Origin: Dicyema japonicum
Lineage: Eukaryota; Animalia; Dicyemida
Length of the DNA: 64,000 bases
Reading direction: 5' to 3'
Assembly: GCA_011109175.1 (NCBI GenBank)
Contig: RDEW01000035.1
Location: 62,001-126,000 of the forward strand
Within the stretch, counting starts at the first letter, position 1. Each line of letters starts with the position of its first letter. The position numbers were made by a program, and so were the translations under genes. A model generated the notes under the pieces. It was not told where the DNA came from and searched no databases. It worked only from the letters and a program-made list of their open reading frames with translations. Shown one piece after another: positions 20-62,265 of the stretch.

Positions 20-2412
20 TTAGTTAAGTACATTGTTTAAGACAGGCAAATATCTAAAATTAATAATATTACCTACCTTGAATTCCACTCTTCTATTCGA
101 AATCGAAAATCAGTTTTACCAATAAATGAACTCAAACTTCGTAGACATATTTTAGCAGAATTTTTGGCTTGAATAGAATCGGACTCCTACACATTACGGT
201 TAGAAAAACCAAAGTATAAAACATAGTATCGAAAAAATGATTGATGTATTTGCTAAAGAGTTTCAATCCTAACATGCTTGCAATTGAGGGTAACTAAAGG
301 TAATATTACAGGATTAACTAAATTGCATAGAGTCTTGGAAAAATCCCAATATCTTGTATAATTTTTAAACGAAGCTGCAAAAATTAATGAATTCAACAAA
401 TCATCTGATGATTGAATACACATATTTTTTACGTTAACGTCACATTTTAATAGTTCGACAAAAAGAAAAAGGCATCTATTTTATGAAACAAAGGAAAACC
501 CTTCCGCTTCTTCCCATTCTTCTGCTTTCTTATACATTATCGATGGGCATGAGCATCCACAGGTTAATTTTGTATTCCTGGAAAATTTCGGTGCGAGTGA
601 TCCGCATGAATACATCTGTTTGTTACTATGAAGTTCAAAATCGTTGTCATATGCACTTTTAGCAACGGAAAATGTAGCACGGCCTGGCTCCAACGTTCGG
701 AAACGTTCAGGGACAGAATCTTGGTTTTTCATAGCCATAAAAGCATTTTTGATGGTTTCAAAAATTTTTGGAAACAAATCATCTTTAAAAATTTAAATAT
801 AAAATTAACTATAAGCAACACATAAAGTAGAAATAGAAGTAGCAGCTCCTGAACGAACATAAGATATGGAATCACGAAGATTAACTAAATAAAGAGACCA
901 CAAAGTTTCTAGAAATTTTCTAATTTTAATTCTATTGAAGTTACCTTCCTTCTTCTGGAAATTTCAAAGCTAATCTGCTGCTGGAGAGACACGCGGCTTT
1001 TAATAGGTCATAAATTATACCATCACGAACAGGCCAGCTGTCGTCACCAAATGAGAAGATAAACATTTCAAAAAATAAATTAGCATAAGGCCGCATTACT
1101 TCACTATTAATCTAAAATATATAATTACTAGTAAACCTTTAAAACTAACTCATTTACAGCAATACATGCACATTCTCTTACTGCATGATTCTCGGATTGA
1201 CATTCCTCTAAATAATACTTTACCTAAATTAAATAAGCAAATTAACAGTTTGCTCAAAATGATCCTCTATTAGTTGTCTTCCTGATTGAAGTGTTACTTC
1301 CGACCACACCTTCTGTGCTAGAAGTCGAACTCCTTCCCCCAAATAATAACTGGAAAATAAGGAAATATTTTTTCACCGATTTAAGCATAATGGTGGTAGT
1401 AAAATTGTGATAAATGTGTCCTTTTCAATCTGATTAAAATCAAATTTCTCAACAGAATTGAAAAACAATCTGGTTGCTTCGACAGCTGATCTTCGAACCT
1501 AATATAAATAAAATTGTCTAGAATAAACCTGACTCCAGTTATCAGACAATCCAATACGAAGTTGTTCAGCTTTATTATCCGATAACAGTAACTTTTTGAA
1601 TATTTCTGTATTAATTTCGCCGACTATAAGATGAGTCAAACCGAAACTTGTAAGTGTATCATACAGCGATGAAAGAATTTTATATAACTTTTCCTTAACA
1701 AAACGGTTATCACATGCGAAAGCAGAATCTACAACTTCACACAATTCGCCATTAAAATAATAAAAAAAGAATCTGAATTGTGTTCTATTATCAAATTTAA
1801 AGCTCTAAAATGACAAACAAAAATACTCAAGCCATGTGACAAGATACCGCCAACTTGAAGAATCAAGAATAATCTCTTTAGCTGAGACTCCGATCTTAAA
1901 CGTAAAATTATTTTCAATAAACCATAGAAATTGAACATTCCTCATTTTGGTGCAATTCTCGTTTTAAGGGACCCGTAGATAATGAATTTTTAGTTTTTTT
2001 TACATTAAGTGAAATCCCATCAATTATTTTCTTTATAATATCCTGGCCAATAAAATTATGATTGTGCTTAAAAAGTAGAGCTAAAACAGCCCCTTTAAAA
2101 TTAAAATTAAGTCTCAACCACACTGTTCTCTTATTCTCACTTCTTCATGTTCCAAATATTGAAAGCAAATACGCGAAATGACAGAAACGATTGAATTACT
2201 TAGAAGACTGTTATAATCTCACTAATAAATATAAGCGATCCGAATATAGTATTCCATGGTATGTCGTTATCATCCAAAACAGTCAATAGCTTTTCAAGCC
2301 ATTTTTGATGACAAGCTTCAGTTAAAGTTTCATTTAATTTAATTAGTCCTTTATCACGATTCAATTTTTTAGTACTGCATAAAAGAGTCGTATATATTTC
2401 TTCAATATCCAT
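20..2412 (-). CDS. Multi-exon conserved uncharacterised HEAT/ARM-repeat protein
   Basis: Exon fragments HEEVRIRE, ACDNRFVKEKLY, GLSDNWSQV, DDSWPVRD..AACL, QMYSCGSLAPK and RIEEWNSR|YLPVLNNVLN* join across ~23-nt GT-AG introns (e.g. 54-76). Family recognised from motif memory, not from a search. Confidence 0.72.
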
Positions 2413-2529
2413 TATAGCAACAAAACTACGTATTAAACACTAAATTAAAAACCAAAATTAAATTTAAATAATTGAATAAAATTTTAATTATAATCTATCG
2501 GCGTCAAAAAATAATTTTAATATTATTAT

Positions 2530-3160
2530 TTATTTATATATGATCTGCTAGAGCAGAAAACTCAACAAACCCAGACAAATTGAAGGGATTACGAACACTC
2601 CGTAACCAAGCACTTACAAAATCAGACAGCTGCAACCAGAAGCCAAATGAAAAAGAATTGAAAAGAATGACACAATACCAATTTCAGCATCCCTATAAAA
2701 GATAACCCTAAGGGACTAATGTAACAATTAGCAATCAAAGAAATAATGTCTAAACTCAAGACCAATAAATCCTCGGGACCTTACGGAATACCAGTAAAAC
2801 TGTTCAAGTATAGGTCTATTAAACTAGCAACAGCTATAACAAAAAATTTTAGTAGGATGGCAATGCATTACAATCCAGACATTCTTTGTAAAGGACTACC
2901 TGTTCCAACAGAAAAACTTAGGAAACCAAAAAAGCCATCTACACACCTACGTCCAATATTTCTACTTTCGGTAAGACCCTTCAGAAAATATTATTAAATA
3001 TTATCCTCAACGAGATAAGACACCAAGTGGACGAATATTTTTACTCAAATCAAAGTGGATTTAGTTTTGAATGTTCAACTGCAGACATTATATGACCATA
3101 TAAATAATATATTTTTCGTTTTGGTTCACCCTCACGCGACGAAAATTGGATTCCAGTTTC
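2530..3160 (+). mobile_element. Degenerate RTE-like reverse transcriptase fragment
   Basis: KLKTNKSSGPYGIPVKLFKY...HLRPIFLL, followed by a frameshifted QSGFSFECSTAD motif. Confidence 0.6.
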
Positions 3161-3169
3161 AATCTGGCA

Positions 3170-3660
3170 ACTAAAAACTACAATTACTCTCCTGTCAACC
3201 TGTTCAACGACTTCAGCGAAGTCGGACTGGATGATGGTGGCTATTAAGCAGGAGAAAAGCTTTCGCTCCCAAAGATATACCTAATCCTCCTCGGGACATT
3301 GAACAGAACCCCGGGCCCCAAAAAAAGTTGAAAATTCCTCAGTGTCATTCAATTTAACATAAACGACCTTGCACACAAATAATCTGAGCTTATTGCCTTT
3401 CTCATCACCCACAAAATCGATATTTCTTTCCTACAAGAAAGGAAGCTATCCAGAAAATCAATTTTTCCTTATTTCAAATATTATTCAATTGTCCACCATC
3501 ACCGACCTAATTCAAACATGGGGGAGGTGTACTCACCTTTATACACAAGTCCATTCCATTCTGTATACTTCAAGTCCATTCTATTCTCTAAGGAAATTAC
3601 CGAAAAAATTCGTACAAGACGCCGACAAAAAAATAATGAATCCTTCACTATCTTTGTTGT
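3170..3660 (+). mobile_element. Degenerate 5' part of an APE-type LINE with a 2A-like motif
   Basis: GACATTGAACAGAACCCCGGGCCC (DIEQNPGP) at ~3295-3318, then IQFNIN...ELIAFLITHKIDI (APE N-terminus) with stops and frameshifts. Confidence 0.6.
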
Positions 3661-3662
3661 TA

Positions 3663-4330
3663 TCCTGGAACTATCTACTTAAATAGTGAAAATACTGAGT
3701 TTATCAACAAGAGGCCGAACTATCCAACTTAAATAGTGAAATTACTGAGTTTACAACAAGAGGAAATTCGAACGATAGAATAATTTCATAACCAAAAGTG
3801 GTGGTAATTTCATGTTCTCAAGTCAAATGAGTTTCAAAGCGAAGATCCACATTACAAGGGCATATTACAAGAGGAAGGAACTATTGCACGGCAAGGGAAT
3901 CTCCAAGGCGAAGAAGCATATTACAAGTCGAATAAACTTATTCTACAAGACGAAGGAACCTGTTGACGGCAAGGGAATCTCCTCAAGGCGAAGAAACATA
4001 TTACTAGTCGAATGGACATATTCTACAAGAACTAAGGAACCTATTGAAGGGCGCAGTAGCCAAAGGGTCAAAATCTCTGGATATTTTCCAAGTTGGACCT
4101 AGTACCCACACCAATTGATCCCTACATTCGTATCTGGGTCTACATGGAACTTTGTTACCCACACCATTGATCCCTACAAAACCTGGGACTGCCGTGGAAG
4201 TACATACTGGAGTTGGGACCTACTGGGGGGTACCCAACCAATTGTTCCCTACATTCGAATTGGGATCTACACAAGACTTTGTTAACCACATCATCGGTCC
4301 CTACAGGGCGGCTTGGGACTATTGTACTTA
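3663..4330. repeat. Block of imperfect tandem repeats (~55 bp x2, ~80 bp x3, shorter CCCTAC-containing units)
   Basis: AACTATC..ACTTAAATAGTGAAA.TACTGAGTTT twice; GCGAAGA..CATATTAC..GTCGAAT and CGGCAAGGGAATCTCC repeated; ACCCACACCA.TTGATCCCTACA repeated. Confidence 0.65.
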
Positions 4331-4735
4331 CTACTGTAAGTTTAAAAGGACTCACTAGGGGAGAACTAACTGAAGATGGGCTTACTAGCTTTGTGCCTAC
4401 TACGTTCTGGATATGAAATTAGGATGTGTAACTTCCAAGACTAGTAGAAAGGTGATTAGTTATTTTCGTCTTCCCCGTGCCTCCTTATTTTAAATTGAAG
4501 TCTTCATTATTTGGTAATCTCCGTTTTCGAAAACGACGTTGAGCATCGTATCGATCCATTATCTACCCTGTAACATAATGCAATATCCCTAAGCGCCTAA
4601 TAGAAAGTAGCCACAAAAGTTCTGCAATATCCTTTCACCATCCAATGGATAGGGATCCTTCCGACCGATGTAGATAAGTGTAGAACGTGCTGTATTCAAA
4701 TTAATATCCGAGTATCTTCAAATTATAGAAATAGC

Positions 4736-4786
4736 CGCGTGGCGCCATGTGGTGCTTCGTGGCTCATTGGCTGAAGTTTCAGATAT
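4736..4786 (+). mobile_element. Isolated head of the 330-bp SINE family
   Basis: GCCGCGTGGCGCCATGTGGTGCTTCGTGGCTCATTGGCTGAAG matches the heads at 15.2k, 22.2k and 42.6k. The downstream body differs. Confidence 0.6.
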
Positions 4787-4835
4787 GTAGAACCTCAGGA
4801 AAACATTTTCCATAATATCAGGTCTAATGCTAATA

Positions 4836-4890
4836 TGTCGCGAGCGCTGAGCGAGATAACAGGTGATTTGACAGGTGCCAACATCTGTCA
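4836..4890 (+). mobile_element. Ginger-like terminal inverted repeat (TGTCGCGA..., left end)
   Basis: Similar to the reverse complement of 23761-23821; preceded by TAATA. Confidence 0.55.
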
Positions 4891-5079
4891 TGTTAATTGA
4901 AAATTAATCAATACTAAAGTTTTGGAATAATTTGTGCGTTTTTAAATAAAATCATTATTTTTACTAATAGATATTAATCTTAGGTAATAATTGTGGCGCG
5001 CCATCCGCGTTACAAATTCTATCGTGTTACATTTTGACCTTGAAATTTTATTTTTTTTGACACGAATCAACCTTGATAT

Positions 5080-7039
5080 GAATGAATGAATGAATGAATG
5101 AAAGATCAACAACATGTTACGAATTAGGTACCAATAAGTCTGCATGTTAGGCCTAGACTCTTCATCCCGGTACTTGTTTTCTGACAATCCATCCTATGTC
5201 TATTTACTTTGACGTCCTGATTCGGATGTCCTCCTTGATCGGCCTGACAAGTTTGTTTTCTTCCTCCGTCAGGGCTTCTTGCAATTTTTTACCGAGGGCT
5301 AGTTTTATTGCCGCCCGCCGTGTTCTCTCCAGTCGTGCGATAATCCTTTCTCTCGAAGGGGTGTAGAACCATCCCTCGCTTCCGTAGATCATTCTGGGAA
5401 GAATCACATTCCGGAAGATGAAGAGCATGGAATTGACGTCTAGCTTCAGTCTTTTAGTGCAGTACAGTGCCTGCAAAGCCTTTTTCCTTCGCCCTTCAAT
5501 GTCCTCCATGTATGATCCTCTTCCATCGACTGAAATCCCCAGGTATTTCAATGACTAAACTCTCGGTATACAGAGAGTGTAGGGCTCTTCCTGATGTCTA
5601 CCCGGCCTGCTTATCCTCAAATAACTGGATTTTTCCGTCGAGAGTTTCATGCCTCTCCGATCGCACCAACCCTGGACTTCGTCGATAAAAACACCTAGTC
5701 GCCGCTCTGAGAAGTATGCCTTCAAAGATGAATCCAGGATTAGAATGTCGTCCGCGTAAATCATTTACTTGGTTCTGGCGTTCTGCGGAGACGGAAAATC
5801 TTCCATAAATATGTTAAATAGCAAAGGGCTAAGAATAGATCCCTGTGGCACTCCTCTTTTAAATGATATTCCATCCGAATAACTTCCACCAACTACCACG
5901 TGGGATATCCTCCCAGTTAGGTAGTCCTTCAGCCATAGGAACATTTCTCTGGTTATTTTAGACCGAATTAGTTGACGAAATAACGCCTCGTGCCATACAC
6001 TGTCGCCTCGTGCCCTTCTATAAACCGATTCAGTCTTTTAAAAACAATACGTTCCATAATCTTTGATGTAGAACATATGAGACTTATCGGCCTATAACTG
6101 AGGGGATCCTTCCTGAGCTTTTCCTGGCTTGAGGATCATCTTAACAATAGAACATTTCCATAAAGGAGGTACGTGTCCGAGCCTGAAACTCGAGTCGTAC
6201 ATCTCACGTAGAACAGACAATAGTTCATCAGAACCTTCTTTGAACATAATAATAGGAATCCCATCAAATCCGGGTGCCTTGTTCTTGCATTCACGAATTG
6301 CTGTTCTAACTTCTGCCATTGAGACTTTTTATGTCAAACTACCTAGATCTTCCATAGAGTAATCCATGAAATTAGGCAACTCATCTGAAAATTTTTCATT
6401 TATAACACTAATAGGATCGACACCCTGTATATTCTCTAGTTGACTTCGGAATACCGAAGGAACTTTTTCCAATGGGATTGTCCTTCCATTTTGATCGGCT
6501 AGCTCAATGTTTTTTGCTTTTAAACTCCCATTCGTTAGCCTCCTGTACATTTTCCAGAAACAAGGGTTTTTCCAGTTAACCTTAGAGGCTGCAATCTTCA
6601 ATTTATTTTCGGCGTTTACTCTCCAAGCTTCTTGTAGCATTGTTTGGATCACATCAATTCTGTATTTCAAGATTTTCCTGTCTCACATATCAATACATCG
6701 TCTGTGCTTCGCCTTCAGAGTATTCCTCTCGCGAATAAGATCCCGTATTATAGGTGGGCAAGAATCTTTGCTCTTCAGAAAGCTCTTCGAGTAAACCTTC
6801 CTTCCATATAATTGAAGATACGTCAGCATAGTGCTGGATAATACCCTGTCGAAAACATCCAGCTCATTTGGTGTAGAACAAATGATAGTCTTCAATAGTA
6901 TGTTCACGGACAAATAATGACGATAATGTACCCAGTCTATTGACGAAGTATCATAGTATAGGAAAATATTTTCTGCAATGTTTGGTTCCAAATTTATAGA
7001 TATTTCCTGCGGAATATGATCACTCCCAATGTCCCAAAG
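5080..7039 (-). mobile_element. 5'-truncated L2/jockey-like LINE
   Basis: WDIGSDH (APE end), KAPGFDGI, GVPQGSILSPLLF, YADD; (CATT)n tail; 12-bp TSD CAACCTTGATAT at 5068-5079 and 7040-7051. Confidence 0.9.
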
Positions 7040-7473
7040 CAACCTTGATATTCAGATGTTGCAGTTTTTATATCAGCCTTGATATTCAGATGTTGCCGTT
7101 TTTATCAAAAATGCTACTTAAAAATTTAGTACTAACTATTGAAGAGTACAAAAATATTGTTGCTTATTTGGAAAACAATAAGATTGATAAAAATTTAACT
7201 GGAATGAAGAAGTCCCGATTTCTAAATAAGACAAAATGTTTCTTACTAGAAGACTCTAGGCTAATAACCAATGATGGAACAAAAAAATTGTAATTTCTCA
7301 AGATGATTTGGAAACTATGAAGTCTGAATTTACATTTGAAAACGCATTATGGAGTAAACAAAATGAAAGAATACTCTGACAACTATTTTTTTACTATTAA
7401 GAGATCTATCATCCGAAAAGTTTGTGCTGAATGTATGGCGTGTGCACAAAGTCAGCCGCTAAAAGCACATATT

Positions 7474-14902: not shown

Positions 14903-15236
14903 TATTTATTAACCCCGGATACACCGAGAAAGAAGTTAAAGTAAACAACTAATTAAATGTATCCAGTTTCCACTTCTACAGAAACAGAGTCCATCCGGAA
15001 TCAGCATAAAGGGTAAGACGTCCATTACATGCAGTTGTGGAAACCCCTCCAGTGGAGTGGGGAAGAGCAAATGATCCTTTTTCATGCCGGCCTGGCACTG
15101 AGCGTCACCTAGACAGGTGGATCACATGACGTCACTCTATTAGGAAGAGAGAGGAGGAACAGACAAGCAAGCAGAAAAAATTTAAATCAATTAACCACGC
15201 AGCACCACATGGCGCCACGCGGCCTTATTCCTTACC
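14903..15236 (-). mobile_element. SINE-like element (~330 bp), copy 1
   Basis: 17-bp TSD CAATAATAATTATTATT (14886-14902, 15237-15253); (TAAA)n tail; homologous to the 22.2k and 42.6k copies. Confidence 0.88.
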
Positions 15237-22175: not shown

Positions 22176-22492
22176 GCCGCATGGATTTATGTGATGCTAC
22201 GTGTCTAATTGGTTGAAGTTTTGCATTTGTTTTGTCTGTTCCTTCTCTTCCACTTCCTACTAGAGTGTCGTTATGTGATCCACCTGCCTCAGGCATCCAG
22301 TGCCAGACTGGCACGAAAAAGGATCATTTGCTTTCCACACTGGATGGGTTACAAGGAATGGACGTCTCTTACCTGGCTTTTACTTGTGTGACGTTGAAGG
22401 ACTCTGTTTCTGTAACAGTGGAAACTGGATACACTTAACTAGTTGTTTACTGTTAACTTCTTTCTCGGTGTATCCGAGGTTAATAGATTAAT
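22176..22492 (+). mobile_element. SINE-like element, copy 2
   Basis: Head GCCGCATGG, body AAAAAGGATCATTTGCT, tail GGATACAC...GTGTATCCGAGGTTAATA. Confidence 0.85.
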
Positions 22493-27879: not shown

Positions 27880-29212
27880 AATTATCCAAAGTGGAACCCG
27901 CCGACATTATCGACGTTGCGTTACGATTGCAACAGAGATCAACTGGAGAAACCAAAAGACGTTCCCTCTTCTTACCGCCCCGTCTCAATAACTTGTGTTT
28001 TATCAAAAGTGCTGGAAAAGCTTATATTAATGTGCATCTCTCCTGTTCTACATCTATTAGAGTTTCTACATGGTTTCAGGGCAGACCGTTCTACAACGAC
28101 TCATTTGGGTTCTATCTCCCAGTTTATTACTGACGGCTTCAACACGAGAACACACCTACGGACGGCCTTTACGGACGGCCTTTGTATCCTTCGACATACA
28201 GAAGGCCTTTGATTCTGTTCCGAGGAAACTCCTAACGCATAAGATTTTTAATTTGAACTTACATCCGAACATCAAGCTATGGCTGGAAAATTTCTTAACT
28301 GGACGACGCGGAAGGGTCGGGATTGACAAAACCACTTCAAAATCAAGGCTACTCCCCAATGGGGCCCCGCAAGGCTCCCCTTTATCTCCTCTCCTTTTCA
28401 ACTTATTTCTACATGACCTATTTACTACCAATGACCAGGACACTATGTTTTTATCCTATTCGGACGACCTAATTATCGCTGCAGGAGATAAATCTCCTTC
28501 CGTGGCTGTAGCAACTGTTCAGACACACCTAAACCGAGTATGTGACTGGCTATCTGCAAATATGTTATGTGTATCAGCATCTAAATCACAGTTCACTATT
28601 TTCACTACTGATAGAAGATTTAAGGATGGACTCGAACTGTTTTTTGGAGATACTTCTATCCCTTCTACGCAAACCCAGAAGATCTTTGGGGTAGTTTTCG
28701 ACTCTCTGATGACGTTCTCGAGTAACATAGAGGGTCTTCGGAAATGGAACATTTTAAAAGCGATCATAAAGAAGAACCTTTTTCCCCTGCTGCTTGCGTC
28801 AACAAGGTCTACCAACATGCCATCGTTTCTACCATTGAATATGCCTTCTTTTTTCGAGAGTGGATCGTTTAAACTCTCTTAGGCGGAAAATTATGCACCA
28901 AACGGACATCCCTATTGGCGGCCTCGTTTCTGATGAGGCGATGTTGAAGAATGGCCAGGGTTTCTTACGTTTCTGCAAGGAACTGAAAAACCCATTCAAG
29001 GAAAAGGTGGTCCATGCAGAGGAATTTCGGTCGGTTATAAAAAAGTTCACGTCGATTGAATTCCTTTGCAGAAGGAAGAGAAGACGCTTCCGGAATGCGG
29101 TTGGGTCATCAAAAGACCAGACAAAGAGAGTTTGGATGTTGTTGGAGGCTGGGATCACCTAATTAGTTAGTTTTGACCTATCTTTCTTGGTGGTCTTGGA
29201 GTTAAATAAATA
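27880..29212 (+). mobile_element. 5'-truncated L2/jockey-like LINE
   Basis: YRPVSIT, DIQKAFD, GAPQGSPLSPLLF, YSDD; ORF ends AGIT* in the stem-loop tail; (TAAA)n. Confidence 0.85.
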
Positions 29213-42369: not shown

Positions 42370-43400
42370 AGTTATTTACAATTAAGTAATATTTTACATT
42401 ATCCGCTTTAAAAGTCATATCCTTGGATAAGATTTTGTCAAAAATCGAAAATGATCGTTCCACTACGCACTATGTTATTCCACATACGTCTTCTTTGAAA
42501 TCCATTTTTTTCAAATAATTGTATGCATTATTTATAGTAAAATATGTCGATTCTAAATCATCAAGCAAAGGAATTTTGAAGATAGCCACGTTGCGCCATG
42601 TGATGCTTCTTGGCTAATTGATTGAACTTTTTGTTTTGTTCGTATGTTCCTCCTCTCTCTTCTTATTAGAGTGGCGTCATGTGATCCACTTATCTAATTG
42701 GCGCCCAGTGCCAGGCCGATACGAAAAAGGATCATTTGCTCTTCCCCACTCCACTGGAGGGGTTTCCACAACTGCAACTATGGACGTCTTTTATCTCTAT
42801 GTTGATTCCGGATGGACTCCTTCTGTAGAAGTGGAAACTGGATACATTTAATTAGTTGTTTAATTTTACTTCTTTCTCGGTGTATCCGGGGTTAATAAAT
42901 AAAAATAAATCAAGCAAATGTAATAAAGTGAATATTGTGATATTATCGTCGTTAGATCTTCATGAAGTTGTCCATTAAATAAACATTCTTTTGCTCTTTT
43001 AATAAGCAAAGAATCTCCTTCTAAGAATGTGCATATTTGAATAACATATGTACTGTATAATTTAGTTAAAGATTTGTTACAATAAGACAGCAATGTCACA
43101 CCGATTATTTTAAATTTATATTGATGCTTAAAATTATGATATAATTATATTATTTAAATTTTTATTTAAAAATTGACCTTAAAATCTTAAAATTGACCTC
43201 CTTTCTCCGAATTGAGCAGTTATTTGACATTGGATATACATTTATTAGTGGAGAAACGAGAATTAAAGGAGTCAGGCATTTATTACCATCCACCACGATG
43301 GATTCTTAAAAAACTTATATACATGTTTGGTTTTTATCAGCTAAAGTTCATACGCAAGTGGTTACGTTTAAAGCATCTGGGTTTAATTTTTCTCTGATAA
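42370..43400 (-). mobile_element. Degenerate hAT/CGGBP-like transposase remnant, interrupted by a SINE
   Basis: C-terminal CVVERSFSIFDKIL motif; the reading continues across the SINE TSD. Confidence 0.4.
42570..42908 (+). mobile_element. SINE-like element, copy 3
   Basis: 10-bp TSD ATCAAGCAAA (42560-69, 42909-18); same head, body and tail as the other copies. Confidence 0.88.
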
Positions 43401-50530: not shown

Positions 50531-51916
50531 GCATTCCTACATTTTCGAAGACACTTAGAAGGTCAAAATCCCATCCAGGAAATCTATTTTTACATAATTC
50601 AATAGCAAGAATTAAATCCTCCATAGATATCGTTCCACATAAAGTCCCTTCCATAAGTGAGGATGGTCACCTTCAAGAACACCAATTTTTATGCCTTTGG
50701 GAATAATTAACAAAAAATCCAATTCTTGTTCCTCTGTCAGTTGTTGTCTTAAGGCATCTTCCACTTTTTCTTTCGGGATCCGAGAACCGTCATGAGATTT
50801 AGATTTATCTCTTCATTTTTTATTCAAAGAATTCATTTTCGAAAAAATTTTCCAAATTTTAGGATTATTACGATAGAGTTTGCAACATTCTCTCTTCCAT
50901 CTCTCTTCTTCAATACGTTTTAATACTTTTATCAATACCTTCTTTATCGACTTTATCCTCTCTTTAAGACAGTAAGAATCTTGCGGATCCCATATCGTCT
51001 TGGCTTACCTTCAAAAATCCGCTTTTCATTAAGCAGAGATTATATTTGCAATCTTAAGACTTTCAAGGTTTTATTTGTAATATTATGCAAGACTTTCAAG
51101 GTTTTTATTTGTAATATTTTTTTGGTGAGGTGGTGACGTGCCTCGTTTCTTCTGTGTACAACGGTTAAGAAAAATGTCCGAAAAACACTCATTACACAAT
51201 CGAGAACTCAGGCTAATGACGTTCAACGTACGTGGAATATCGAAAGATTAGACAAGGAAAGTACTTTGTGACGATCTCGAGAAATACAAAATATCTATTG
51301 GCTGCCTACAAGATACGAAAATCGAAAATGGACGCGATGAGACATGGAACAACTACCGACTGATTCTTTTCCCAACTGAATGCAAGCACTACGGCATGGG
51401 ATTTTCCCTACACGTGAATTACCTCAAAAATTACATCGCTATTTGAGAGTCAACGATCGAATATGTGTCCTACAAGTCAAACTAAAAGAACTATGCCCGT
51501 CCAAGAGTCTATTAACTGTCATAAATGTCTATGCACCACACTGTGGACGAGTAATCAAGAACCCCAGTGAGCTCGAGGAATATTACTCAGAACTATCAAG
51601 CACATACTCTAATAATGCTTCCTTGTCTTTGTTGCGAGAGATATGAATGCAAAGGCCGGAATGCGAATGGGGCCCGAAGAATCCTCTATTGCAGCGGTTC
51701 TCAACCTGGGGTCGATTCGACCTCCAGGGGTCTAAAATCAATCCAGATCGATCGTAAGGGGGTCGAAAATAAAATACTTGGGAGTCGAAAATAAATTTAA
51801 TATATTTAATTTTTTCATTTTAAATTAAGTTAGTTTTTGGCACTTGGATTTATAAAAAATTCTTTTGATGATAGACCATATTGCTTACTGCATAACAAGT
51901 CATTATCAAATGATGC

Positions 51917-54900
51917 TTTTGGTTGAGCTGGTGACGTGGCTCTTGATCTCAATGTCTGGAAAACACAGTTTCAAGCCATTGGACTTCTCCCTTCTCACGT
52001 TTAACGTCAGGGGACTCTCTAGCGTTTGGAAACGGAAGGAACTGGTCGAGGATCTTTCAAAATACAAGGTTTCAATCGCCTGCCTTCAGGAGACCAAACT
52101 TATAAACGGGATCGAAGAACAACACGGGAACTTCCGACTAATCTTCCTTCCAGGTGGAAACAAACACTATGGGCTAGGATTTGCAGTCAGGAAAGATCTA
52201 TCCAAGAGAGTCTGCCAATATTACAATGTGAATGATAGAATCGGGGTGTTGCAATTGAAACTGGATGACCTCAACCCGTCGAAGAAATATCTAACTATAA
52301 TAAACGTGTACGCCCCTCACAGTGGATGGCTTAATAAAAACCCTGATGAGATTGATGACTTTTACACCAGTCTTTCTGCCGTTTTCTCCATGTATGCTCT
52401 CTCAACACTAGTAATGATCGCAGGAGACCTAAATGCGAAAGCTGGCACCCAGGTTACGACCGATGAGACATTCATGGGAAGGCATGGTAGGGGGAAAAGA
52501 AATCTCCCGGGAACTCTACTAGCTAACTTCTGTCAAACGAACAACCTATTTTTATGCAATACAGCCTTCATGCATCCAGCCAGACATAAATCTACGTGGT
52601 CGGGACACAGAACAAACCCCGAAGGGCGAGTGATAAATATGTACAACCAGATCGACTATATCATATGCAGGCAAAAAGATCGAGGAATTATACTTGATGC
52701 ACGAGCTTATGGTGGATCGATTATCGACAGCGACCACAAAATGGTTATTGCTAGACTTTCTCTAAAAAGATTTATGGTACTACAAAGAACGAAACGGAAG
52801 CACATTGAAACCACAGAACCAACTATAGACGTTATAATTGGAATCCTTAATCAGTCAATCAGAAGGGGCCCTAGAATTCAAAGAATATCTGGATGCAGAA
52901 CTAGAAAACATGCCTACAGATTTGCCGCCCGGAAAATCCTGGGATTTTGTAAAGCACTCAATACATAAAGGAGCCAATCTGCATCTATTGAAAGAAAATG
53001 AGAAAACCCATCGCACAATGAAATTTACACGGTGAAGGACCTTGCCAATAAACAGAAGACCATATGGATGCTATATCAAAATACTGACGATTCGAACGTA
53101 AAATCAAAATTGCGGCTAGAAAGAAAAACTATCAAAGCAAAAATAAGAAAAACTATACGCCAGCATAACAGAAATAAAGCACTGGACCAGATTAAGAAGA
53201 TAGAATCTCTCAAGGACAACGCTAGATTTTACGAGGCTGTGAAACAGATGAAAGGAAATAGACCCCATCAACCGATAATGATAAGAGATGACAAAGGAAC
53301 GCAAATTGTGGACCAAATGGAAGTGGCTGAAATTATCGCTGCCCACTTTGGAAAACTTTTTGACCCAAGGAACGACACTATCAACCTAGAACGAGGAAAA
53401 TTGGACGAGGAAATCACACCATATGAAGTTGAACTTGCGAGTTCCAAGTTGAAAAACAACAGGACTCCTGGCCCCGACGGACTCGCTGGTGAATTCTTCA
53501 AATATGGAACCCAAAAGCTGTATGAATGCATCGCTAGGATCCTGAATGAAATGTACTATTATGGTCACACGCTGACCCTGGGAGAGGGTATCTTGATACC
53601 TGTACAGAAGGCGAATAAACCAAGATCTAAGGTGGAGAACCTCCGTCCGGTCATATTAATGAATTCACTTCGGAAAATTCTGGCGAACATAACATTACAA
53701 AGGATGGAAGGACGCCTAGATACTTTTCTGTCGCCATACCACAGCGGATTCCGAAAAGGAAGATCTACTTCCGATGTTTTGTGGTCCCACAAGTGGAGAT
53801 CTGCGGCCGTTCAAAAGTTCAAAATGTCTACAACCATCCTCGGAATCGACATTTCGAGGGCCTTCGACTCTGTCGACAGACGGAGGCTAATACTGGTTTT
53901 GGAAAGTTTCCTAGACGCTTCCACTGTCAGAATGGCCACCACCCTCCTAGCTGATACTTGGCTCACTGTAAGAGTCGGGGGAGCCTTGTCTCGCCGATTT
54001 GAGACGACTGTTGGCACTCCACAGGGAGACCCATTATCACCTATACTTTTTGTCATATACCTTGAAGCTGCTTTACGGGAGTCAAAACCGATAATGGGTG
54101 AAAAGACAAACATTATTGCGTATGCTGACGACGTAGACTTTACTTCAAATGACAAAATACCGCTCACCCGCTTGATGGAAGAAGTGTCTGGAAGACTAGC
54201 CGAATGGTTCCTAACAGTAAATCCGCACAAGACTGAGATAACTGAAATCAAGAGGGAAGAGACAAGGATGGAGGAGCACTGGCGCAAGTGCAAAAAGCTT
54301 AGATCCCTCCTAGTAGACCATGAAGACATTACAAGAAGGAAAACTCTAGCACAAACTGCCTTCTCCAAACTAAAGTAAATCTGTTCCACAAAAAGGGCCT
54401 TGACATTATAACAAAAGCTCGATTATACAACTCGCTAGTGAAACCCATACTATATAACGCTGGTACCTGGGCCTGCTCAAGAAATGAACTGAAAGGCTTA
54501 ATGCGTTTCATAGAGACCAACTACGGCATATGATGTTCGAAAGAAGTGATACGAGGATGTCATCTAATCTTCTTCTATAAGAGGACGAAGACCTCAGAAA
54601 TTTCTAATAAGATTCTGGATACACGATGGAGGCTTTTCGGCCATATTCTGCGACTGGACCTAGATGCCCCCGCGAACGTAGCCATGGAGGATTACTTCAT
54701 GTTGGAGGCCCCCGTTTCCGTGGTCGCCCAGGGACGACACTGGCAGTCGTTCTCGACGAGGACCTCAAAGAAATGGGACGGCATCTTGGAAGTGGAGAGG
54801 ATCTGGACTGGTTGCGCGCTGCGGCTTTGAATAGGAGGAAGTGGATGAAACTAACCAGTGATTTGCTAACTCGTGTTGCACATGCTTTGTCAAGTCCTAT

Positions 54901-54935
54901 GACATAGCGATAAGTGCTTATAATAATAATAATAA
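51917..54935 (+). mobile_element. Full-length RTE LINE, family RTE-1 copy b
   Basis: Near-identical to 7474-10480, inverted; 13-bp TSD TATCAAATGATGC (51904-16, 54936-48); splits the transposase at LSNDA|MKP. Confidence 0.95.
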
Positions 54936-55564
54936 TATCAAATGATGCAATGAAACCGTCCAAATTGTTGGATCATCTGAGGAGAAAACATTCGGATAAA
55001 AAAGATAAATCATTAGAGTATTTTGAAGAATTAAAGGATTCTTTTCGTAAACAAAAAACGATTGACACTGTTTTTACAAATAGTAATTAAAGAAACAATA
55101 GTCGTTGTTATTTTAAATTATATTTAGGAGGACTAATTGTATCCTATAAAATTGCAATGATTATTGCCAAAAATGAGAGTTCCCATGTTTCTGGTGAAAA
55201 TCTCATCAAACCATCTATATCACTGATTCTATCAGATCTGATGGGTTTAAATCCTGACGAAATTTTAAAATCCTTACCAATTAGCAATTATTCAATTCGC
55301 TGCAAAATTGACGAAATGTATGATAATGTTAAACATATTTTATGTGAAAGACTTAAAAATACTATTTTTTCGCTTTAAATTGACGAAAGTCATATATGTG
55401 ACAACCAACCAATTCTAATGGGATATGTCAGGTTAATCTTATTAGAAGCTTACCCCTTAAGATATTTTGACGATCATGCTCTTCCTACAGAAGATTTATT
55501 ATTCGTCAATTATTCGAAAACTTATACGACTGGATTTTTTATTTTTTCCGCTGTCAAATTATTT

Positions 55565-55746
55565 AAAAAAAAAACCCACCACTCTTCAAACTCTAATGAA
55601 GGATGATCGTCGCCTATTCAAGAAAGCCGTGGGTACTCTGGAGGAACATAAGAAAACTTTCTCGATCCTGTTGAGGCGTACCGGGATCACTTAATTAGTT
55701 GGTTTACTCCTTCTTTCTTGGTGTTCCCTTTTCGGGGTTATTAAAT
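55565..55746 (+). mobile_element. 5'-truncated LINE tail (GGATCAC family) inside the hAT transposase
   Basis: 9-bp TSD AAATTATTT (55556-64, 55747-55); reading ends RTGIT*. Confidence 0.75.
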
Positions 55747-58700
55747 AAATTATTTTTGGATGACAAGAAATTCCATATGAAAATTTGGTTTCTTGTGCAC
55801 AGAAGCGCGAAGTCTAATATTGAAAAAATAAAGGATTTGCGGCATATTTGAAAAAAATATGTCCAAATGTGATTCATATACATTGAGTTCTACATAGACA
55901 ACACTTGGTTTCAAAAACTTTTTCGCCAATTCTACATGAAACAATAAATATAGTTATTAAAACCATTAACAAAATTAAAGCAAACAGCAAGTATAATAGT
56001 CTTTTTAGAAAATTTTGCTATGAGGCTAAAGAAACATATGTCCGTTTTGTGCTTCACACTAAGGTCATAGTTTCCAATTTTATTTTATAGGTACGATGGT
56101 TATCAAAGGGAAATGCTTTAGAACGACTTTCAATATTATTTGACACAATCGTAATTTTTCTTACTTCTGAGGGTGATAAAAATTTAGCAGATTTAATTGT
56201 ATCGAAAAAAAAGAAATTGTTTATTTGACTTGGATTTTTGGAAAATTTAATGAAATTTCATTAGAACTTCAGGGAAGGTATGTGACGTTAATAGATTGTA
56301 AAAGAATTATTCAAATATTTATCGAAAAAATTAAGTTACATAAATATAACTCGGAAAAAAAGAAATTATTATAACATTCCCGAATTCCACTCAATTGGTA
56401 AAACATTTAATGAAGATATTAACAACTTTTTGACATTTATTAAGCATAGAAAAAGATTTGATTCTTCGATTCCAAGATATTCTTGAATTAGAAATTTCAT
56501 CTTGGATGATTAATCCGTTTTTGTCAAAGCCAGAAAAACAAAAAGAAAATATTAAAGAGAAATTAATTATGTCAAAATTCAATCCAGAATTAAAACTATA
56601 TTATAATGATTCACAATCACCTGTTATTTTTCGGATAAATATGAAAGTGAAATAGAGTTATCCAAAATTGTGGACAGAAATAGCACAATTGCTACTTTAG
56701 TTTCCGACATCATATTGTGTTAATGCGGATTTAGCATTCTACATCGAATTGTAAATATAGAACAAAACAGATTGGATGTGTCCATTTGAGGAGATATTCG
56801 TTAACACAAATAGAGCCAGATATCAAATCTTTGGTAATAAAACATCAGTCACAGGGATCCCATTGGTATTTAATTCATTTTTATTATAGATTTATGCTAA
56901 TATACCAACTTAACATCGAATATATACTTTTTTTGTTTGATTTGATTATTAACAATGAATTCATTTTAGATAGATAACTAATTTTACTTAGAATTGTCTG
57001 TTCTAAATAAAAAAGTTTTAAGGGGTCGATTAAATATTAGGGGAGTCGACGAGTAAAAAAAGGTTGAGAACCCCTGCTCTATTGGAAGACACGGGCGCTG
57101 AAGGAGAAATGCATCTGGCGCCTCTCTTGTGAACTTCTGCAAGGCAAATAGCCTTTTCCTGTGCAACACGGCCTTCACGCACTCAGCTTGCCACAAGACG
57201 ATATGGCACGAACAAATAAAAAACTCTGTCGGAGAGACCGTGAATGTATATAATCAAATCGACTACATTATCTGCCGAAAGTCTATAATCAAACCTGATA
57301 AATGATGCACGTTCCTGCCAGGGAACAACAACTGACAGCGACCACAGGATCGTCATTGCAAAACTTTCTGTAAAAAAGCACCTGATTGGGAAAAAATACA
57401 TTGAAAACGCGAAGAAAGCGAGACAAAAGCCCAATATATACTTTCAGACAGAAAAATTGTGGTTAGAGCCCACTTGTAAAGCTAAATATCACGAACAAAT
57501 CGAGACTCTTATGGAGAAAACCGCACCGGAATCATCAGTACAAACTATGTGGGATCAAAAAAAGCAGGTAATCTCCAAATCGGCCAATATATGCCTTGGA
57601 GTCCGAAATCATCACGCCCTAAAATTGGATCACCACCCGAACCTGCCAGATATGGCAAAGCATTGCAGAGAGCTACGACTAAAAGCGGCAAACACGTCAG
57701 ACGAGAGTAAAAAAAAGAGTTTAATATCCAACAAAGGGAACTAAAGTGGAAAATCAAAAAGATGAACAGAAAACACTCACGGGAAATTATTACATCCCTA
57801 TTAAAGAGGAATGCTTAAGAGACAATTCAAGGATGTTTGCGGCTTTGCGACTGCTGCGGACAAAGAAAGGACAAAACACCCTTCACATCAAAGACAAAGA
57901 TGGAAAATTCGTGGGTAACCCGGAAGAAAAAGCAGAATTGATTGGACGACACTTCGAAACACTGTTGAATAAAGAAAATAAGGACTTTCCCCCTTTCCAG
58001 GGAGATGCAAAGGCGCTAAAAATCCCAAAAACATTGCACTAAGCCGGATAAAGGGTGTGGCGGATCTACCAGCAAGTCAAAGTGGGTTCCGAGAAGGGGG
58101 GTCTACGGCAGACATTGTATGGAGCCACAGATGGCGTTGCGCAACGCACCAAAGATTCAAGAGCGCAACGACCGTTTTGGGAATAAATCTCTCCAGAGCT
58201 TTCGACTCAATAAACAGACAGAAACTGATGAATGTGCTTGAGCAAATATTGGATGAATCGTCGGTTAGGATAATCAGACTACTACTTGCGAATACAAGAC
58301 TATCTGTGAGGACAGAAAGAGCAACTTCCCGCAGTTTCAAAACAACGATTGGGACACCGTAGGGTGATTCCCTCTCCCCTTTACTATTCATCATATACCT
58401 TGAATCTGCACTCCGTGACCTCCGTAAATGCTATATAGGAGACATAGAAGAGACATCTTATGCGGATGATGTGAATTTTGTATCACGGGACGTGACCGCA
58501 CTCCAACACCTACTAGAAAATGCACCTTCGAGATTGAGAAATGGTTTCTCAGCGTAAATGTTAACAAAACTGAAATTACGGAAATTAAAAGAGAAGACGA
58601 TATTACTCATGAAAGATGGAGACGAACTAATAAGCTCGGCTCTCTACTAGGAGACGCTGAAGATGTACTAAGGAGGAAAACACTGGCAAATGCGGCAATG

Positions 58701-59661: not shown

Positions 59662-62159
59662 TTACAAGAGGTCCATACTTCTTTCAATTTTATATATTTG
59701 TTGGTTAATATATTTCAATTGCTGGTAATTAACGGGAATTTGTCTATATGATTAATTTTTGATTAACCAGAGTCTGTAATTGAGTACAATTTATATATTT
59801 ATTGTAATATTCATTTAGTAAAGTGTGAATACAGTCAATATGCGTGTGAACATAATTAAGAATAATGTTAGGATCAATATCAGGTAATCTAATAAAACAA
59901 GGAGCTAATATAGTGGATAGACTAAAACAATTCATTTTGTTAACATGTCCATAAGCAACAACTTTAACTAGATGCCACATAAAAATATTGAATATTCTGA
60001 GATGATGAGGTTGAGTTTTTGATAATAAAAGTTTGATGGAATTAATAGAATTAGTAATTTGATAGTAAACGTGAGGACCAAAGAGAGGCTGTGTCATATC
60101 ACGAAATAGAGCCTTTATTAGAGTGGCCAGCGTTAGAGGAGAATAATCACTAAAGTCATTCCAATTATTATTTTTTATTTTATTTTTTAATGTTGTCAAA
60201 TCAGTAAGTGATCCTGGTTTTCTATATATTCCAACCTCATATAGACCACAAGAGGACTCTATTAACTCAATTAATGTAGATAATAGTTGTTCAAACATAG
60301 AATTTAATAATATTTTATCACATTTTTTATGAATAATTATTTTACATTCTATAAAATATATTAAATAATAACCTTTACAAAACAAACTTTTATCAAACAA
60401 TTTAATTGTTGATGAACATAAATTACATAATGTGGGCATATTTAAATTTTGGGTAATATATTTATGATCACAAATTATCCCTTTCCGAATTAGTACTCGT
60501 TTATTACTTTGTTTTAATTTATTCTCACTCTAATTTATTAAATAATATTACTTTATCTTCATTTTTTATTAACTCTATTTGACATTCTTTTAAACTATTT
60601 ATTATTGTATTGACACATTTCTAGTATTATCAATCAATTTACATTATATTCTCCTATTTTCTTATAGTTTGATTTGAAAATAACACCACCAACTGAACGA
60701 AAGTCCTTATTTAATATAAACACAGCTTTAAAGAAATAAGAAAGGATTCTCCATCTCCTCTTTCCTGGGTTATCAAGTGCTTGTCTCAAATGTACTAGTT
60801 TGGTTTGTCTTAGAAATGCAATAATGGAGGATTTCTATAATAACAACAAGACTAACAAAGTGACATTTACTACATATATGTTGGTTAGACAAATAGTGCA
60901 ACTCATCACTAACCTCCAATAATCCAATATAATGAGAATTTCCTGGTTTGTTTATTATTGGGAGAATCATGTAGTCTATTACTACCTTGTAGAGAGTACA
61001 AGAAAGGTCGTAACAAGAAGATTTAATAATAAATTGATAGAAAGTGTGTTGATCAATCATGAGTAATGTACTAGCCTCGAGGAATCTAATATTATTAATA
61101 TGGAGAATAGCATCAAATATATTAATAATTTCATATTGTAAAGATTTGGTGATCCCATACAGGTCATACTATGTAATACTTTCTCATTTAATATATTATT
61201 ATATTCTAATAAATATTGGTTAATACACACGCTTAATGTTATTATAACATTACCCATTCACAATATTATCTTTGTAATATATTCTCGTATATTTTATACT
61301 TGTTTTACAAATTCCCTATTTATTATTATAATATTACTTCCATTATTATTCTACTATTATACAATATTGATTCTATTTCATTCATTGCACTCTTCTCCTT
61401 CAATTCTTTTAGTATATTTTCTACAATATTTCCATTATCCCCCATTATTACTACCGATTGACTACGATTCTCTCTTAACATTCTCTCGTATAACATTCTT
61501 CCCATCCCTTCATATGTATTACTCACTATTCCACTTTCGTATCTATTACACAACCACTCAATTAAGGACTTTTCGTCACATTCTTTCAACTTGGGTGTCC
61601 TTTTTTTACTCATTCTTGAAGTTAAGTCATCTTTGTTACATAAGTCTTGGTTAATTATCCCTTCTTTACTCATCATGGAGGTTATGTTGTTCATTGTACG
61701 CAGGTCTTGGTTAGGTGTCCTATCTTTACTCATTTTTGAAGTTATGTCGCCTATATTACGCAGGTCTTGGTTAAGTGTATCTACTTTAGTCATTTTTGAG
61801 GTTATGTTGGGACTAGCCACGTCTCCCTTACATATTTCACTCATTGAGGGAGTTTGATTGAGTAAATAAAAAGTACATCCAGTCACATTGTTTAGTGATC
61901 CCATCTCAAGAAGGTTTGCCACATGTGACCATGTTTTATAGTATTGATATGGTTTTTCAGTGAGTGATAATACACGTTCACTGGATATTCTTCCATTATT
62001 GAAACATACTTCAACCAATCTGAAATTCTTTAATGATTCTGTAATTTTACAAAGCTTAGTAATGTTAATAATAACATCATAACAGTCATCATTTGAGAAT
62101 ACTTTCACCTTTATTGTTCTCCCTGGTAATTGCACTGATATTACTTCATAAGATCCCAT
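59662..62159 (-). CDS. MYO9: Myosin-IX-like protein: RA domain, shrunken motor remnant, C1, RhoGAP; 3' end approximate
   Basis: N-terminal RA-like domain (FRLVEV..ERVLSLTEKP); motor remnants DEKSLIEWLCNRY, SQSVVIMGDNG and INQYLLE; C1 CNLC..FCK..CKIIIHKKC; RhoGAP GLYEVGIYRKPGS..LAPCFIR. Confidence 0.72.
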
Positions 62160-62265
62160 TACTGATTCAATTTATTATTTTATTTTATTTTTTTAAATCC
62201 TTTTTGAATTTTAATATTATTATTATTAAATATCTTTTAATCCAACGACTAGAAAGTCGAAAGGA

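What the first reader, a model, noticed from the sequence alone, without database searches (positions are those of the whole stretch)
55101..56090. hAT transposase gene carries three host-style ultrashort introns
Conserved Buster/ZBED5-type motifs are restored only after removing GT-AG segments of 27 nt (55101-55127; NN-R|GLIVSYKIA), 30 nt (55432-55461; LMGYVR|YFDD) and 27 nt (56064-56090; LHTK|VRWLSKG). Their size and pyrimidine-rich 3' ends match the host's 22-30 nt introns. Related transposases usually read through these motifs uninterrupted, so this suggests intron gain inside a mobile element. That could mean an active tiny-intron gain process or splicing-based control of transposase. The gain and control interpretations are inference.
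Basis: partly seen in the sequence, partly recalled or inferred. Interest (0 to 1): 0.8.

Follow-up and report, generated by a model that had tools for sequence, protein, structure and literature searches.

The report
Dead Buster transposon carrying three micro-introns
A broken copy of a cut-and-paste jumping gene in a tiny-intron animal (probably the octopus parasite Dicyema japonicum) has three 27-30-base segments that look like the host's own miniature introns; intron-free relatives lack them, so the transposon lineage probably gained them, but no RNA data shows that they are spliced.

Summary
Segments 55101-55127 (27 nt), 55432-55461 (30 nt) and 56064-56090 (27 nt) each start GT and end AG. 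Each matches a clean 9-, 10- or 9-residue gap against at least ten full-length Buster/ZBED5-like transposases. Removing them gives a gapless alignment.

Five relatives read straight through all three sites in genomic DNA: beetle, Octopus vulgaris, and three metagenome or assembly contigs.

The gene here is dead. The element runs 51692-57076, with inverted repeats and the 8-bp duplication CTCTATTG. It carries two nested LINE insertions, three stop codons and at least six frameshifts.

Contigs from four runs of one sample show a high-copy family. Other copies keep the three segments. At one stop and six frameshifts, other copies carry letters that keep the frame open.

New here: a roughly 45%-identical Buster lies on a contig labelled Octopus sinensis, which is probably dicyemid contamination. 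It has a 29-nt GT-AG segment at the same position and phase as intron 2, 26 extra bases at site 1, and no intron at site 3. This suggests stepwise gain.

Splicing is unproven, because no RNA run could be reached. Splicing-based control is speculation. The scan noted the same phenomenon on at least eight other pieces of this genome.

The parts
51684..51691 (+). left copy of the 8-bp target-site duplication CTCTATTG of the hAT element
   Evidence: The identical octamer flanks both ends. It fits the nnnTAnnn Buster target preference (my own knowledge of Arensburger et al. 2011, not tested here).
51692..51708 (+). 5' terminal inverted repeat CAGCGGTTCTCAACCTG
   Evidence: It matches the reverse complement of the 3' end with 2 mismatches. 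Four matches were found in the window against 0.09 expected.
51692..51916 (+). hAT 5' segment: untranslated leader plus remnant of the N-terminal coding region (...LGFIKNSFDDRPYCLLHNKSLSND), which continues in frame at 54949
   Evidence: Translation and comparison with P0024 and L003 N-termini. No in-frame start codon was found in this copy.
51917..54936 (+). nested non-LTR retrotransposon (APE endonuclease plus reverse transcriptase, ending in an (ATA)n tail) inserted into hAT exon 1; 12-bp duplication ATCAAATGATGC at 51905-51916 and 54937-54948
   Evidence: Pfam Exo_endo_phos 2e-11 and RVT_1 8e-32. Duplication coordinates.
54949..55100 (+). rest of exon 1 (AMKPSKLLDHL...NSN*RNN); stop TAA at 55088
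   Evidence: tblastn to P0024 residues 40-94. Other copies read G at 55088, giving GAA, in 42 contigs.
55101..55127 (+). candidate micro-intron 1: 27 nt, GT-AG, phase 1, no in-frame stop
55128..55431 (+). exon 2 (GLIVSYKIA...FSL*IDES...LMGYV); stop TAA at 55376
   Evidence: phmmer found 293 relatives at E<=1e-3, and homology starts right after intron 1. Alignment.
55432..55461 (+). candidate micro-intron 2: 30 nt, GT-AG, phase 2, no in-frame stop
   Evidence: A 29-nt GT-AG segment sits at the same position and phase in L003:7101-7129.
55462..56063 (+). exon 3, broken by the insertion at 55565-55746, frameshifts near 55769 and 55821, and stop TGA at 55884
   Evidence: Other copies carry an extra G after 55769.
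55565..55746 (+). 182-nt insertion of a very high-copy LINE-3'-end/SINE-like repeat with 9-bp duplication AAATTATTT (55556-55564 and 55747-55755)
   Evidence: Duplication. The 3' 60 nt match LINE tails elsewhere in the window. Word depth is about 5 times that of the hAT, and some contigs show the empty site.
56064..56090 (+). candidate micro-intron 3: 27 nt, GT-AG, phase 0, in-frame TAG; it splits the invariant HTE|VRWLSKG motif
   Evidence: Thirty-six contigs of other copies cover it and read T instead of C at 56066.
56091..56866 (+). exon 4 (VRWLSKG...HQSQGSH) with frameshifts at about 56204, 56355, 56432, 56721 and 56801, and in-frame stops
   Evidence: Five tblastn pieces in three frames against P0024 residues 336-592. 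Other copies hold frame-keeping letters at each of these places.
57060..57076 (-). 3' terminal inverted repeat (reads CAGGGGTTCTCAACCTT on the minus strand)
57077..57084 (+). right copy of the 8-bp target-site duplication CTCTATTG

Best explanation
Window 51692-57076 holds one decayed copy of a roughly 2.2-kb Buster-type hAT DNA transposon. It is inserted in an older LINE and is itself hit by two later LINE-type insertions.

The three 27-30-nt GT-AG segments are spliceosomal micro-introns of the family's transposase gene. They were already present in the active source elements, and this copy inherited them. In an intact copy the host spliceosome, which routinely removes 20-30-nt introns, would have to cut them out to produce the roughly 590-residue transposase. 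Retaining intron 3 would stop translation at its TAG.

The introns were gained inside the dicyemid-resident Buster lineage, after it separated from intron-free relatives. Intron 2, and probably intron 1, came first. Intron 3 came later or only in this family.

Shown: the anatomy, the precise gaps, the absence of the segments in relatives' DNA, their presence in other copies, and the shared intron-2 site on a second lineage. Inferred: that they are spliced, and the order of gains.
For: - Exact 9/10/9-residue gaps at GT-AG boundaries, and a gapless spliced alignment.
- Low chance probability.
- The sizes fall within published dicyemid intron sizes (PMC6543705, PMC13644364).
- Intron 3 contains a stop and splits the invariant HTE|VRWLSKG motif, so it cannot be coding.
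- Contigs of other copies cover introns 2 and 3 (37 and 36 contigs, with substitutions inside them). No 27- or 30-nt skip appears among the listed joints or deletions. At one stop and six frameshifts of this copy, other copies carry frame-keeping letters.
- The relatives' genomic DNA is uninterrupted at all three sites: L005, a complete element with inverted repeats and one 585-aa frame; L004, Diabrotica; L006, an Octopus vulgaris chromosome; and L007 and L008.
- L003, which is 44.8% identical, has a 29-nt GT-AG segment at the same codon position as intron 2 and 26 frame-shifting extra bases at site 1, but reads HTE-VR straight through site 3.
Against: - No RNA evidence. The four runs laid are of unknown kind, come from one sample and look genomic, and they show no splice joints.
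- All three lengths are multiples of three, and introns 1 and 2 have no in-frame stop, so those two could in principle be translated.
- None of the three has the host's preferred GTA start (PMC13644364).
- The stops at 55376 and 55884 are not among the listed differences from other copies. A large share of copies may therefore descend from an already defective element moved in trans. That weakens the argument 'family-wide, therefore functional'.
- Most rows of the read laying tables were hidden, so rare intron-free copies cannot be excluded.
Confidence: 0.72

Rival explanations
1. The segments are small insertions (debris) that arose once in a defective copy. They spread because that copy was mobilised in trans by other transposase sources. 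They are never spliced.
For: - The family includes many internally deleted derivatives (joints skipping 263-1986 nt).
- Two stops of this copy are not visibly corrected in other copies.
- There is no RNA evidence.
- The 5' splice sites lack the preferred A at position 3.
Against: - Three of three insertions have GT-AG ends, host intron size and T-richness, at roughly 1e-6 by chance.
- They are the only insertions of this size in the alignment apart from a LINE fragment with its own target duplication.
- A lineage only about 45% identical carries a GT-AG segment at the same codon position. Neutral debris would not survive that much divergence with its ends intact.
Confidence: 0.12
2. The introns are ancient features of Buster transposases. 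They shrank together with the host's introns and were lost in the sampled relatives, so they are retained rather than gained.
For: - Intron 2 is shared by two deeply diverged lineages.
- Other hAT groups do carry introns, for example the five-exon BuT2 (PMC3942097).
Against: - Five DNA-level relatives read through all three sites. They come from beetle, octopus and unnamed eukaryote assemblies, and include the octopus element inside the same 100%-supported clade.
- So do all 15 aligned protein relatives.
- L003 lacks intron 3.
Confidence: 0.08
3. Segments 1 and 2 are in-frame coding insertions (extra loops of 9-10 residues) and not introns. Only segment 3 is an intron or a lesion.
For: Both are multiples of three and have no stop in frame, in this copy and, for the few substitutions seen, in other copies.
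Against: - Both have GT-AG ends exactly at the gap boundaries.
- Both split codons in a way that regenerates the conserved Arg.
- Intron 1 shares the T-richness of intron 3.
- L003's counterpart at site 2 is 29 nt and shifts the frame, so it cannot be coding there.
Confidence: 0.05

Closest known systems
Buster family of hAT DNA transposons (TcBuster, AeBuster1; domesticated ZBED5, FAM200, GTF2IRD2, ZMYM6-like)
   Same: - 8-bp target duplication with central TA.
- CAG...-type terminal inverted repeats.
- Transposase homologous along its whole length to relatives that carry PF27073 (FAM200-ZBED5 RNase-like), PF27046 and PF14291.
- N-terminal CxxC...MKPSKL..H motif and C-terminal ...HQSQGSH end.
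   Different: - The sampled relatives have a single uninterrupted reading frame in genomic DNA. This family has three 27-30-nt GT-AG interruptions.
- This particular copy is a pseudogene.
Intron-bearing hAT transposase genes (Drosophila BuT2 with five exons and roughly 58-155-nt introns, PMC3942097; maize Ac and medaka Tol2 from my own knowledge)
   Same: A transposase gene of a cut-and-paste element interrupted by spliceosomal introns whose sizes match the host's typical short introns.
   Different: - Those belong to the Tip or Ac groups, and their intron positions are not shown to be shared with this element.
- Here the introns are under 31 nt, lie in the Buster group, and have intron-free close relatives. 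That polarises the change as a gain.
P-element third-intron control (my own knowledge)
   Same: Retention of one intron (here intron 3, with its in-frame TAG) would give a truncated N-terminal protein.
   Different: There is no evidence here for regulated retention or for a repressor. This is only a conceptual parallel.
Introners / transposon-derived introns (PMC9860276, PMC12130899)
   Same: Both concern lineage-specific intron gain.
   Different: - Introners are repeated mobile sequences of tens to hundreds of bases that create many similar introns.
- The three segments here are dissimilar to each other, unique in the window and too short to be mobile elements.

Membership tests
hAT superfamily, Buster family (transposon) | 8-bp target-site duplication | tested here: met
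   CTCTATTG at 51684-51691 and 57077-57084.
hAT superfamily, Buster family (transposon) | short terminal inverted repeats | tested here: met
   CAGCGGTTCTCAACCTG against CAGGGGTTCTCAACCTT, 15 of 17 identical. Similar ends occur in L005 and L003.
hAT superfamily, Buster family (transposon) | transposase homologous to Buster/ZBED5-type proteins over its whole length | tested here: met
   - tblastn covers P0024 residues 40-592, E about 1e-57 to 1e-66.
- The relatives carry precomputed PF27073, PF27046 and PF14291.
- The local Pfam copy did not recognise either the pieces or P0024 itself.
hAT superfamily, Buster family (transposon) | open reading frame encoding an active transposase (autonomous copy) | tested here: not met
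   Three stops, at least six frameshifts, two nested insertions and no start codon. This copy is a dead member of the family.
U2-type spliceosomal intron (host micro-intron class) | GT...AG termini exactly at the borders of sequence that is extra relative to homologues | tested here: met
U2-type spliceosomal intron (host micro-intron class) | length within the host's intron length distribution | tested here: met
   The lengths 27, 30 and 27 nt compare with a median of 27 bp and two thirds under 30 bp in Dicyema sp. (PMC6543705), and under 30 bp in D. japonicum (PMC13644364). I did not verify the host's identity independently.
U2-type spliceosomal intron (host micro-intron class) | host splice-site preference (5' GTA; A residues upstream of AG) | tested here: inconclusive
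   - Position 3 is C, T and C (T in other copies), not A.
- A residues do occur 4-10 nt before each AG.
- The published logos are weak (PMC13644364).
U2-type spliceosomal intron (host micro-intron class) | removal from mature RNA | not testable with these tools
   No RNA run was identified. Reads were laid on four runs of unknown kind, probably DNA, and showed no such joints.
Introner-like mobile introns | many near-identical intron copies in different genes | tested here: not met
   The three segments are unlike each other, and blastn of the element against the window finds no other copy of them.

The most novel reading that the evidence does not exclude
Dicyemid-resident Buster transposons form a clade with Buster elements of their octopus hosts, which points to an old host-parasite transfer. 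They then acquired micro-introns one after another (site 2, probably site 1, then site 3). These introns only a tiny-intron spliceosome can remove. They would tie expression of the element to dicyemid cells, and retention of intron 3 could yield a truncated regulator. If so, these families are a datable record of de novo micro-intron birth in an animal.
Probability: 0.15. Interest if true: 0.75.

Novelty: new variant of a known kind. Interest (0 to 1): 0.5.

Why it matters
Intron gain is rare in animals, and its mechanism is unknown. Dicyemids have among the shortest introns of any animal. A multi-copy transposon family whose relatives are intron-free gives a clean ancestral state of zero introns. 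It also gives many dated copies and at least two diverged lineages with different intron sets. That makes it possible to ask when and how 27-30-nt introns arise, and what minimal signals they need.

There is also a practical side. Gene predictors that forbid introns under about 30 nt mis-annotate such loci. An example is the chimeric model XP_036354483.1, 'serine--tRNA ligase, mitochondrial-like', on a probably dicyemid contig of an octopus assembly.

Tried and rejected
- The search for homologous proteins with the 95-aa exon-2 piece found nothing, because of the tool's length window.
- A PDB sequence search with the 59-aa exon-3 piece found nothing relevant.
- Pfam on eight pieces of the pseudogene gave no hAT family. 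The local Pfam copy also misses P0024 and P0111, so this blank is uninformative.
- No close paralogue from the host is in the 1.84-billion-protein library; the best identity was 57%. Other genomic copies could therefore not be fetched as sequence.
- RNA: both run searches returned only one sample, of unknown library kind. Read laying showed no 27- or 30-nt joints, which is expected for DNA.
- I considered a ciliate genetic code, because TAA stands where relatives have Gln in FSL*IDES. I rejected it: there are also TGA stops and frameshifts, other copies read GAA at the 55088 stop, and the neighbours are animal LINEs and a myosin-IX-like gene.
- I looked for a start codon and further introns in the 5' segment 51692-51916. 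None was found.
- I looked for tandem-duplication or repeat origins of the three segments. None was seen.
- The search of earlier findings by sequence with P0033 came back blank, which means nothing.
- L007's frame ends at site 2. I tested whether this reflects an intron, but it is a plain 4-nt frameshift.
Full report
**What is there**

The candidate region lies inside a complete but dead hAT element.
- Its ends are CAGCGGTTCTCAACCTG (51692) and, on the minus strand, CAGGGGTTCTCAACCTT (57060-57076). The identical octamer CTCTATTG flanks both sides.
- The element sits in the endonuclease part of an older LINE.
- Two later insertions interrupt it.
  - A 3-kb LINE lies at 51917-54936. It has APE and RT domains, an (ATA)n tail and a 12-bp duplication ATCAAATGATGC.
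  - A 182-nt LINE-tail/SINE-like repeat lies at 55565-55746, with a 9-bp duplication AAATTATTT.
- Without them the element is about 2.2 kb.
- The window is otherwise LINE-rich. A RhoGAP/RA-domain host gene lies at 59.7-62.2 kb on the minus strand.

**The gene is broken**

- The transposase frame has stops at 55088, 55376 and 55884.
- It has frameshifts near 55769, 55821, 56204, 56355, 56432, 56721 and 56801.
- The frame does not begin at MKPSKL, as it first seems. With the LINE removed it continues upstream...LGFIKNSFDDRPYCLLHNKSLSND|AMKPSKL. This matches the N-terminal CxxC region of relatives.
- No in-frame ATG is left in this copy.

**The observation**

The three segments are at the stated coordinates, and each is GT...AG.
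- A phmmer search of exon 2 against 1.84 billion representative proteins gave 293 relatives. Homology started right after segment 1.
- tblastn of the best full-length relative (P0024, 592 aa) covers residues 40-592. It opens gaps of 9, 10 and 9 residues exactly at the three segments.
- In MAFFT alignments with up to 15 relatives, no sequence has residues opposite them. The spliced reading aligns without gaps.
- Segment 3 splits the invariant HTE|VRWLSKG motif and ends in an in-frame TAG.
- GT..AG ends occur in 0.1-0.4% of random 27- or 30-mers of this element. Each segment allows only 2-5 equivalent placements.
- Segments 1 and 3 are 52-56% T and segment 2 is 37% T. The exons are A-rich.

**Relatives are uninterrupted in DNA**

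The following relatives all read through the three sites in genomic DNA.

| Locus | Source | What it shows |
|---|---|---|
| L005 | ENA metagenome assembly | Complete element with inverted repeats and one 585-aa frame |
| L004 | Diabrotica chromosome | P0024 residues 79-431 align in one frame |
| L006 | Octopus vulgaris chromosome OX597819.1 | P0024 residues 6-417 align in one frame |
| L007, L008 | One ENA eukaryote assembly | Read through all three sites; L007 has only a 4-nt frameshift near site 2 |

P0024 and P0015 are single frames on short Logan contigs of unknown nucleic-acid type. I do not count them as DNA evidence.

**Other copies in the same organism**

Only one sample holds the sequence, and the kind of its runs is not on record. 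I laid its contigs at 80% likeness or better.
- 1,300-7,200 pieces per run were placed, with very high summed word depth. This is a high-copy family.
- Many joints skip 263-1986 nt. These are internally deleted derivatives.
- Other copies keep the segments. Position 55456 (inside segment 2) and position 56066 (inside segment 3) are covered by 37 and 36 contigs that differ from the window by one letter. No 27- or 30-nt deletion or skip is among the listed events.
- At one stop and six frameshifts of this copy, other copies carry letters that keep the frame in step with P0024. These are G at 55088, an extra G after 55769, an extra A after 56204, one A fewer at 56355, CA after 56432, G after 56721, and seven more letters after 56801.
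- The segments are therefore family features, while those lesions are younger.

Caveats:
- Most table rows were hidden.
- The stops at 55376 and 55884 are not among the listed differences. They may be shared by many copies, as expected if defective copies are moved in trans.
- These data look genomic: contigs reach 21 kb and cover the nested repeat and the flanks. The absence of splice joints therefore says nothing about splicing.

**A second lineage shares intron 2**

P0033 is annotated 'serine--tRNA ligase, mitochondrial-like [Octopus sinensis]'. It led to locus L003, on contig VCDQ01004311.1.

L003 holds a decayed Buster element that is 44.8% identical to the window's.
- **Site 2:** it has GTTATTTTCGAATTTTTAATAAAATTTAG (L003:7101-7129, 29 nt). 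Removing it restores FVR|YFEN, in the same phase as in the window.
- **Site 1:** it has 26 extra, frame-shifting bases that start with GT, but no clear AG.
- **Site 3:** it reads HTE-VR straight through.

The contig is probably not octopus DNA.
- Its SerRS gene has introns of 33, 38 and 68 nt, plus further short ones that the NCBI gene model misses.
- The SerRS protein is only 47% identical to the true cytoplasmic SerRS of O. vulgaris and O. bimaculoides. It has no closer relative anywhere.
- Its LINE fragments are 36-50% identical to LINEs of the window.

I read it as dicyemid contamination of the octopus assembly, with about 75% probability. If so, two dicyemid Buster lineages that differ at more than half of their residues share an intron position. 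Neutral debris would not be expected to keep GT-AG ends that long. The lack of intron 3 points to stepwise gain, or to a loss.

**Tree**

I used a P0024-anchored alignment of 16 rows. The window element, L003, the O. vulgaris element L006 and P0024 form a clade with 100/100 support.
- Inside the clade, L003 plus L006 is weakly preferred (82/77).
- Window plus L003 as sisters is not rejected (p-AU 0.28).
- The sample is small and was chosen by similarity.
- The link between octopus and dicyemid elements is a lead, not a result.

**Comparison with what is known**

- hAT transposase genes with host-sized introns are known, for example the five-exon BuT2 (PMC3942097).
- Intron dynamics of transposases and of domesticated transposase genes have been studied (PMC4158355, PMC3369469).
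- Dicyemid micro-introns are published (PMC6736024, PMC6543705, PMC13644364).
- My searches found no paper on introns in dicyemid transposons or on dicyemid-octopus transposon sharing.
- This is therefore a new variant of a known kind.

**Earlier notes of this scan**

- The scan reported Buster elements with three or five micro-introns on at least eight other pieces of this genome.
- Two follow-ups reached the same reading, also without RNA.
- I could not read those copies myself.
- The host name, Dicyema japonicum, comes from those notes. It fits the GC content (about 36% here against 36.7% published) and the LINE richness (PMC6736024). I did not verify it.

**Verdict**

- Intron identity and gain are well supported by comparison, but splicing is unproven.
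- 'Active gain' and 'splicing control' are untested.
- This copy itself is dead.

Noticed in passing
L003 (GCA_006345805.1 contig VCDQ01004311.1, range 614218-630021), SerRS at L003:10723-12400: A 688-kb contig of the 'Octopus sinensis' assembly carries a cytoplasmic-type SerRS with 33-, 38- and 68-nt introns. The protein is only 47% identical to true octopus SerRS, so the contig is probably dicyemid contamination. The NCBI model XP_036354483.1 is a chimera of a hAT exon and a SerRS truncated at an unmodelled micro-intron.
   Followed up: partly
L006 (Octopus vulgaris chromosome OX597819.1), hAT at about L006:5019-6670: An intron-free Buster element on an octopus chromosome falls in the same 100%-supported clade as the window element and L003. 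This is a possible trace of old host-parasite transposon exchange.
   Followed up: partly
window 55565-55746: A 182-nt LINE-tail/SINE-like insertion begins with A10, ends ...GGGGTTATTAAAT, and has a 9-bp duplication. Its summed word depth is about 5 times that of the hAT, and its 3' 60 nt recur at LINE ends at 14904-14964, 22427-22471, 29151-29195 and 42840-42900.
   Followed up: partly
window 51917-54936: A nearly full-length APE+RT LINE has an (ATA)n tail and a clean 12-bp target duplication. Its two long open frames (51865-52968 and 53032-54378) suggest a young insertion.
   Followed up: partly
window 54900-57100 (read laying joints): Many contigs join distant parts of the hAT, for example 55069 to 57056 and 55541 to 56928, with short filler. 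These are internally deleted, MITE-like non-autonomous derivatives of the family.
   Followed up: no
window 51837-51916: The N-terminal CxxC motif reads CLLH in this copy, whereas loose ends of other copies read CLLC. No start codon is left, and the true 5' exon structure of the family is unresolved.
   Followed up: partly
window 59747-62171, minus strand: A host gene with RA, C1-like and RhoGAP parts (myosin-IX-like) lies here in long open frames separated by 160-250 nt. It was not analysed for micro-introns.
   Followed up: no
L001 (Logan contig of SRR25018382): The closest full-length relative, P0024, has a base composition almost identical to the window's hAT exons (A 0.38, T 0.32). The nucleic-acid type and organism are unknown. 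If it is a dicyemid transcript, it would be a spliced message of a sister family.
   Followed up: no
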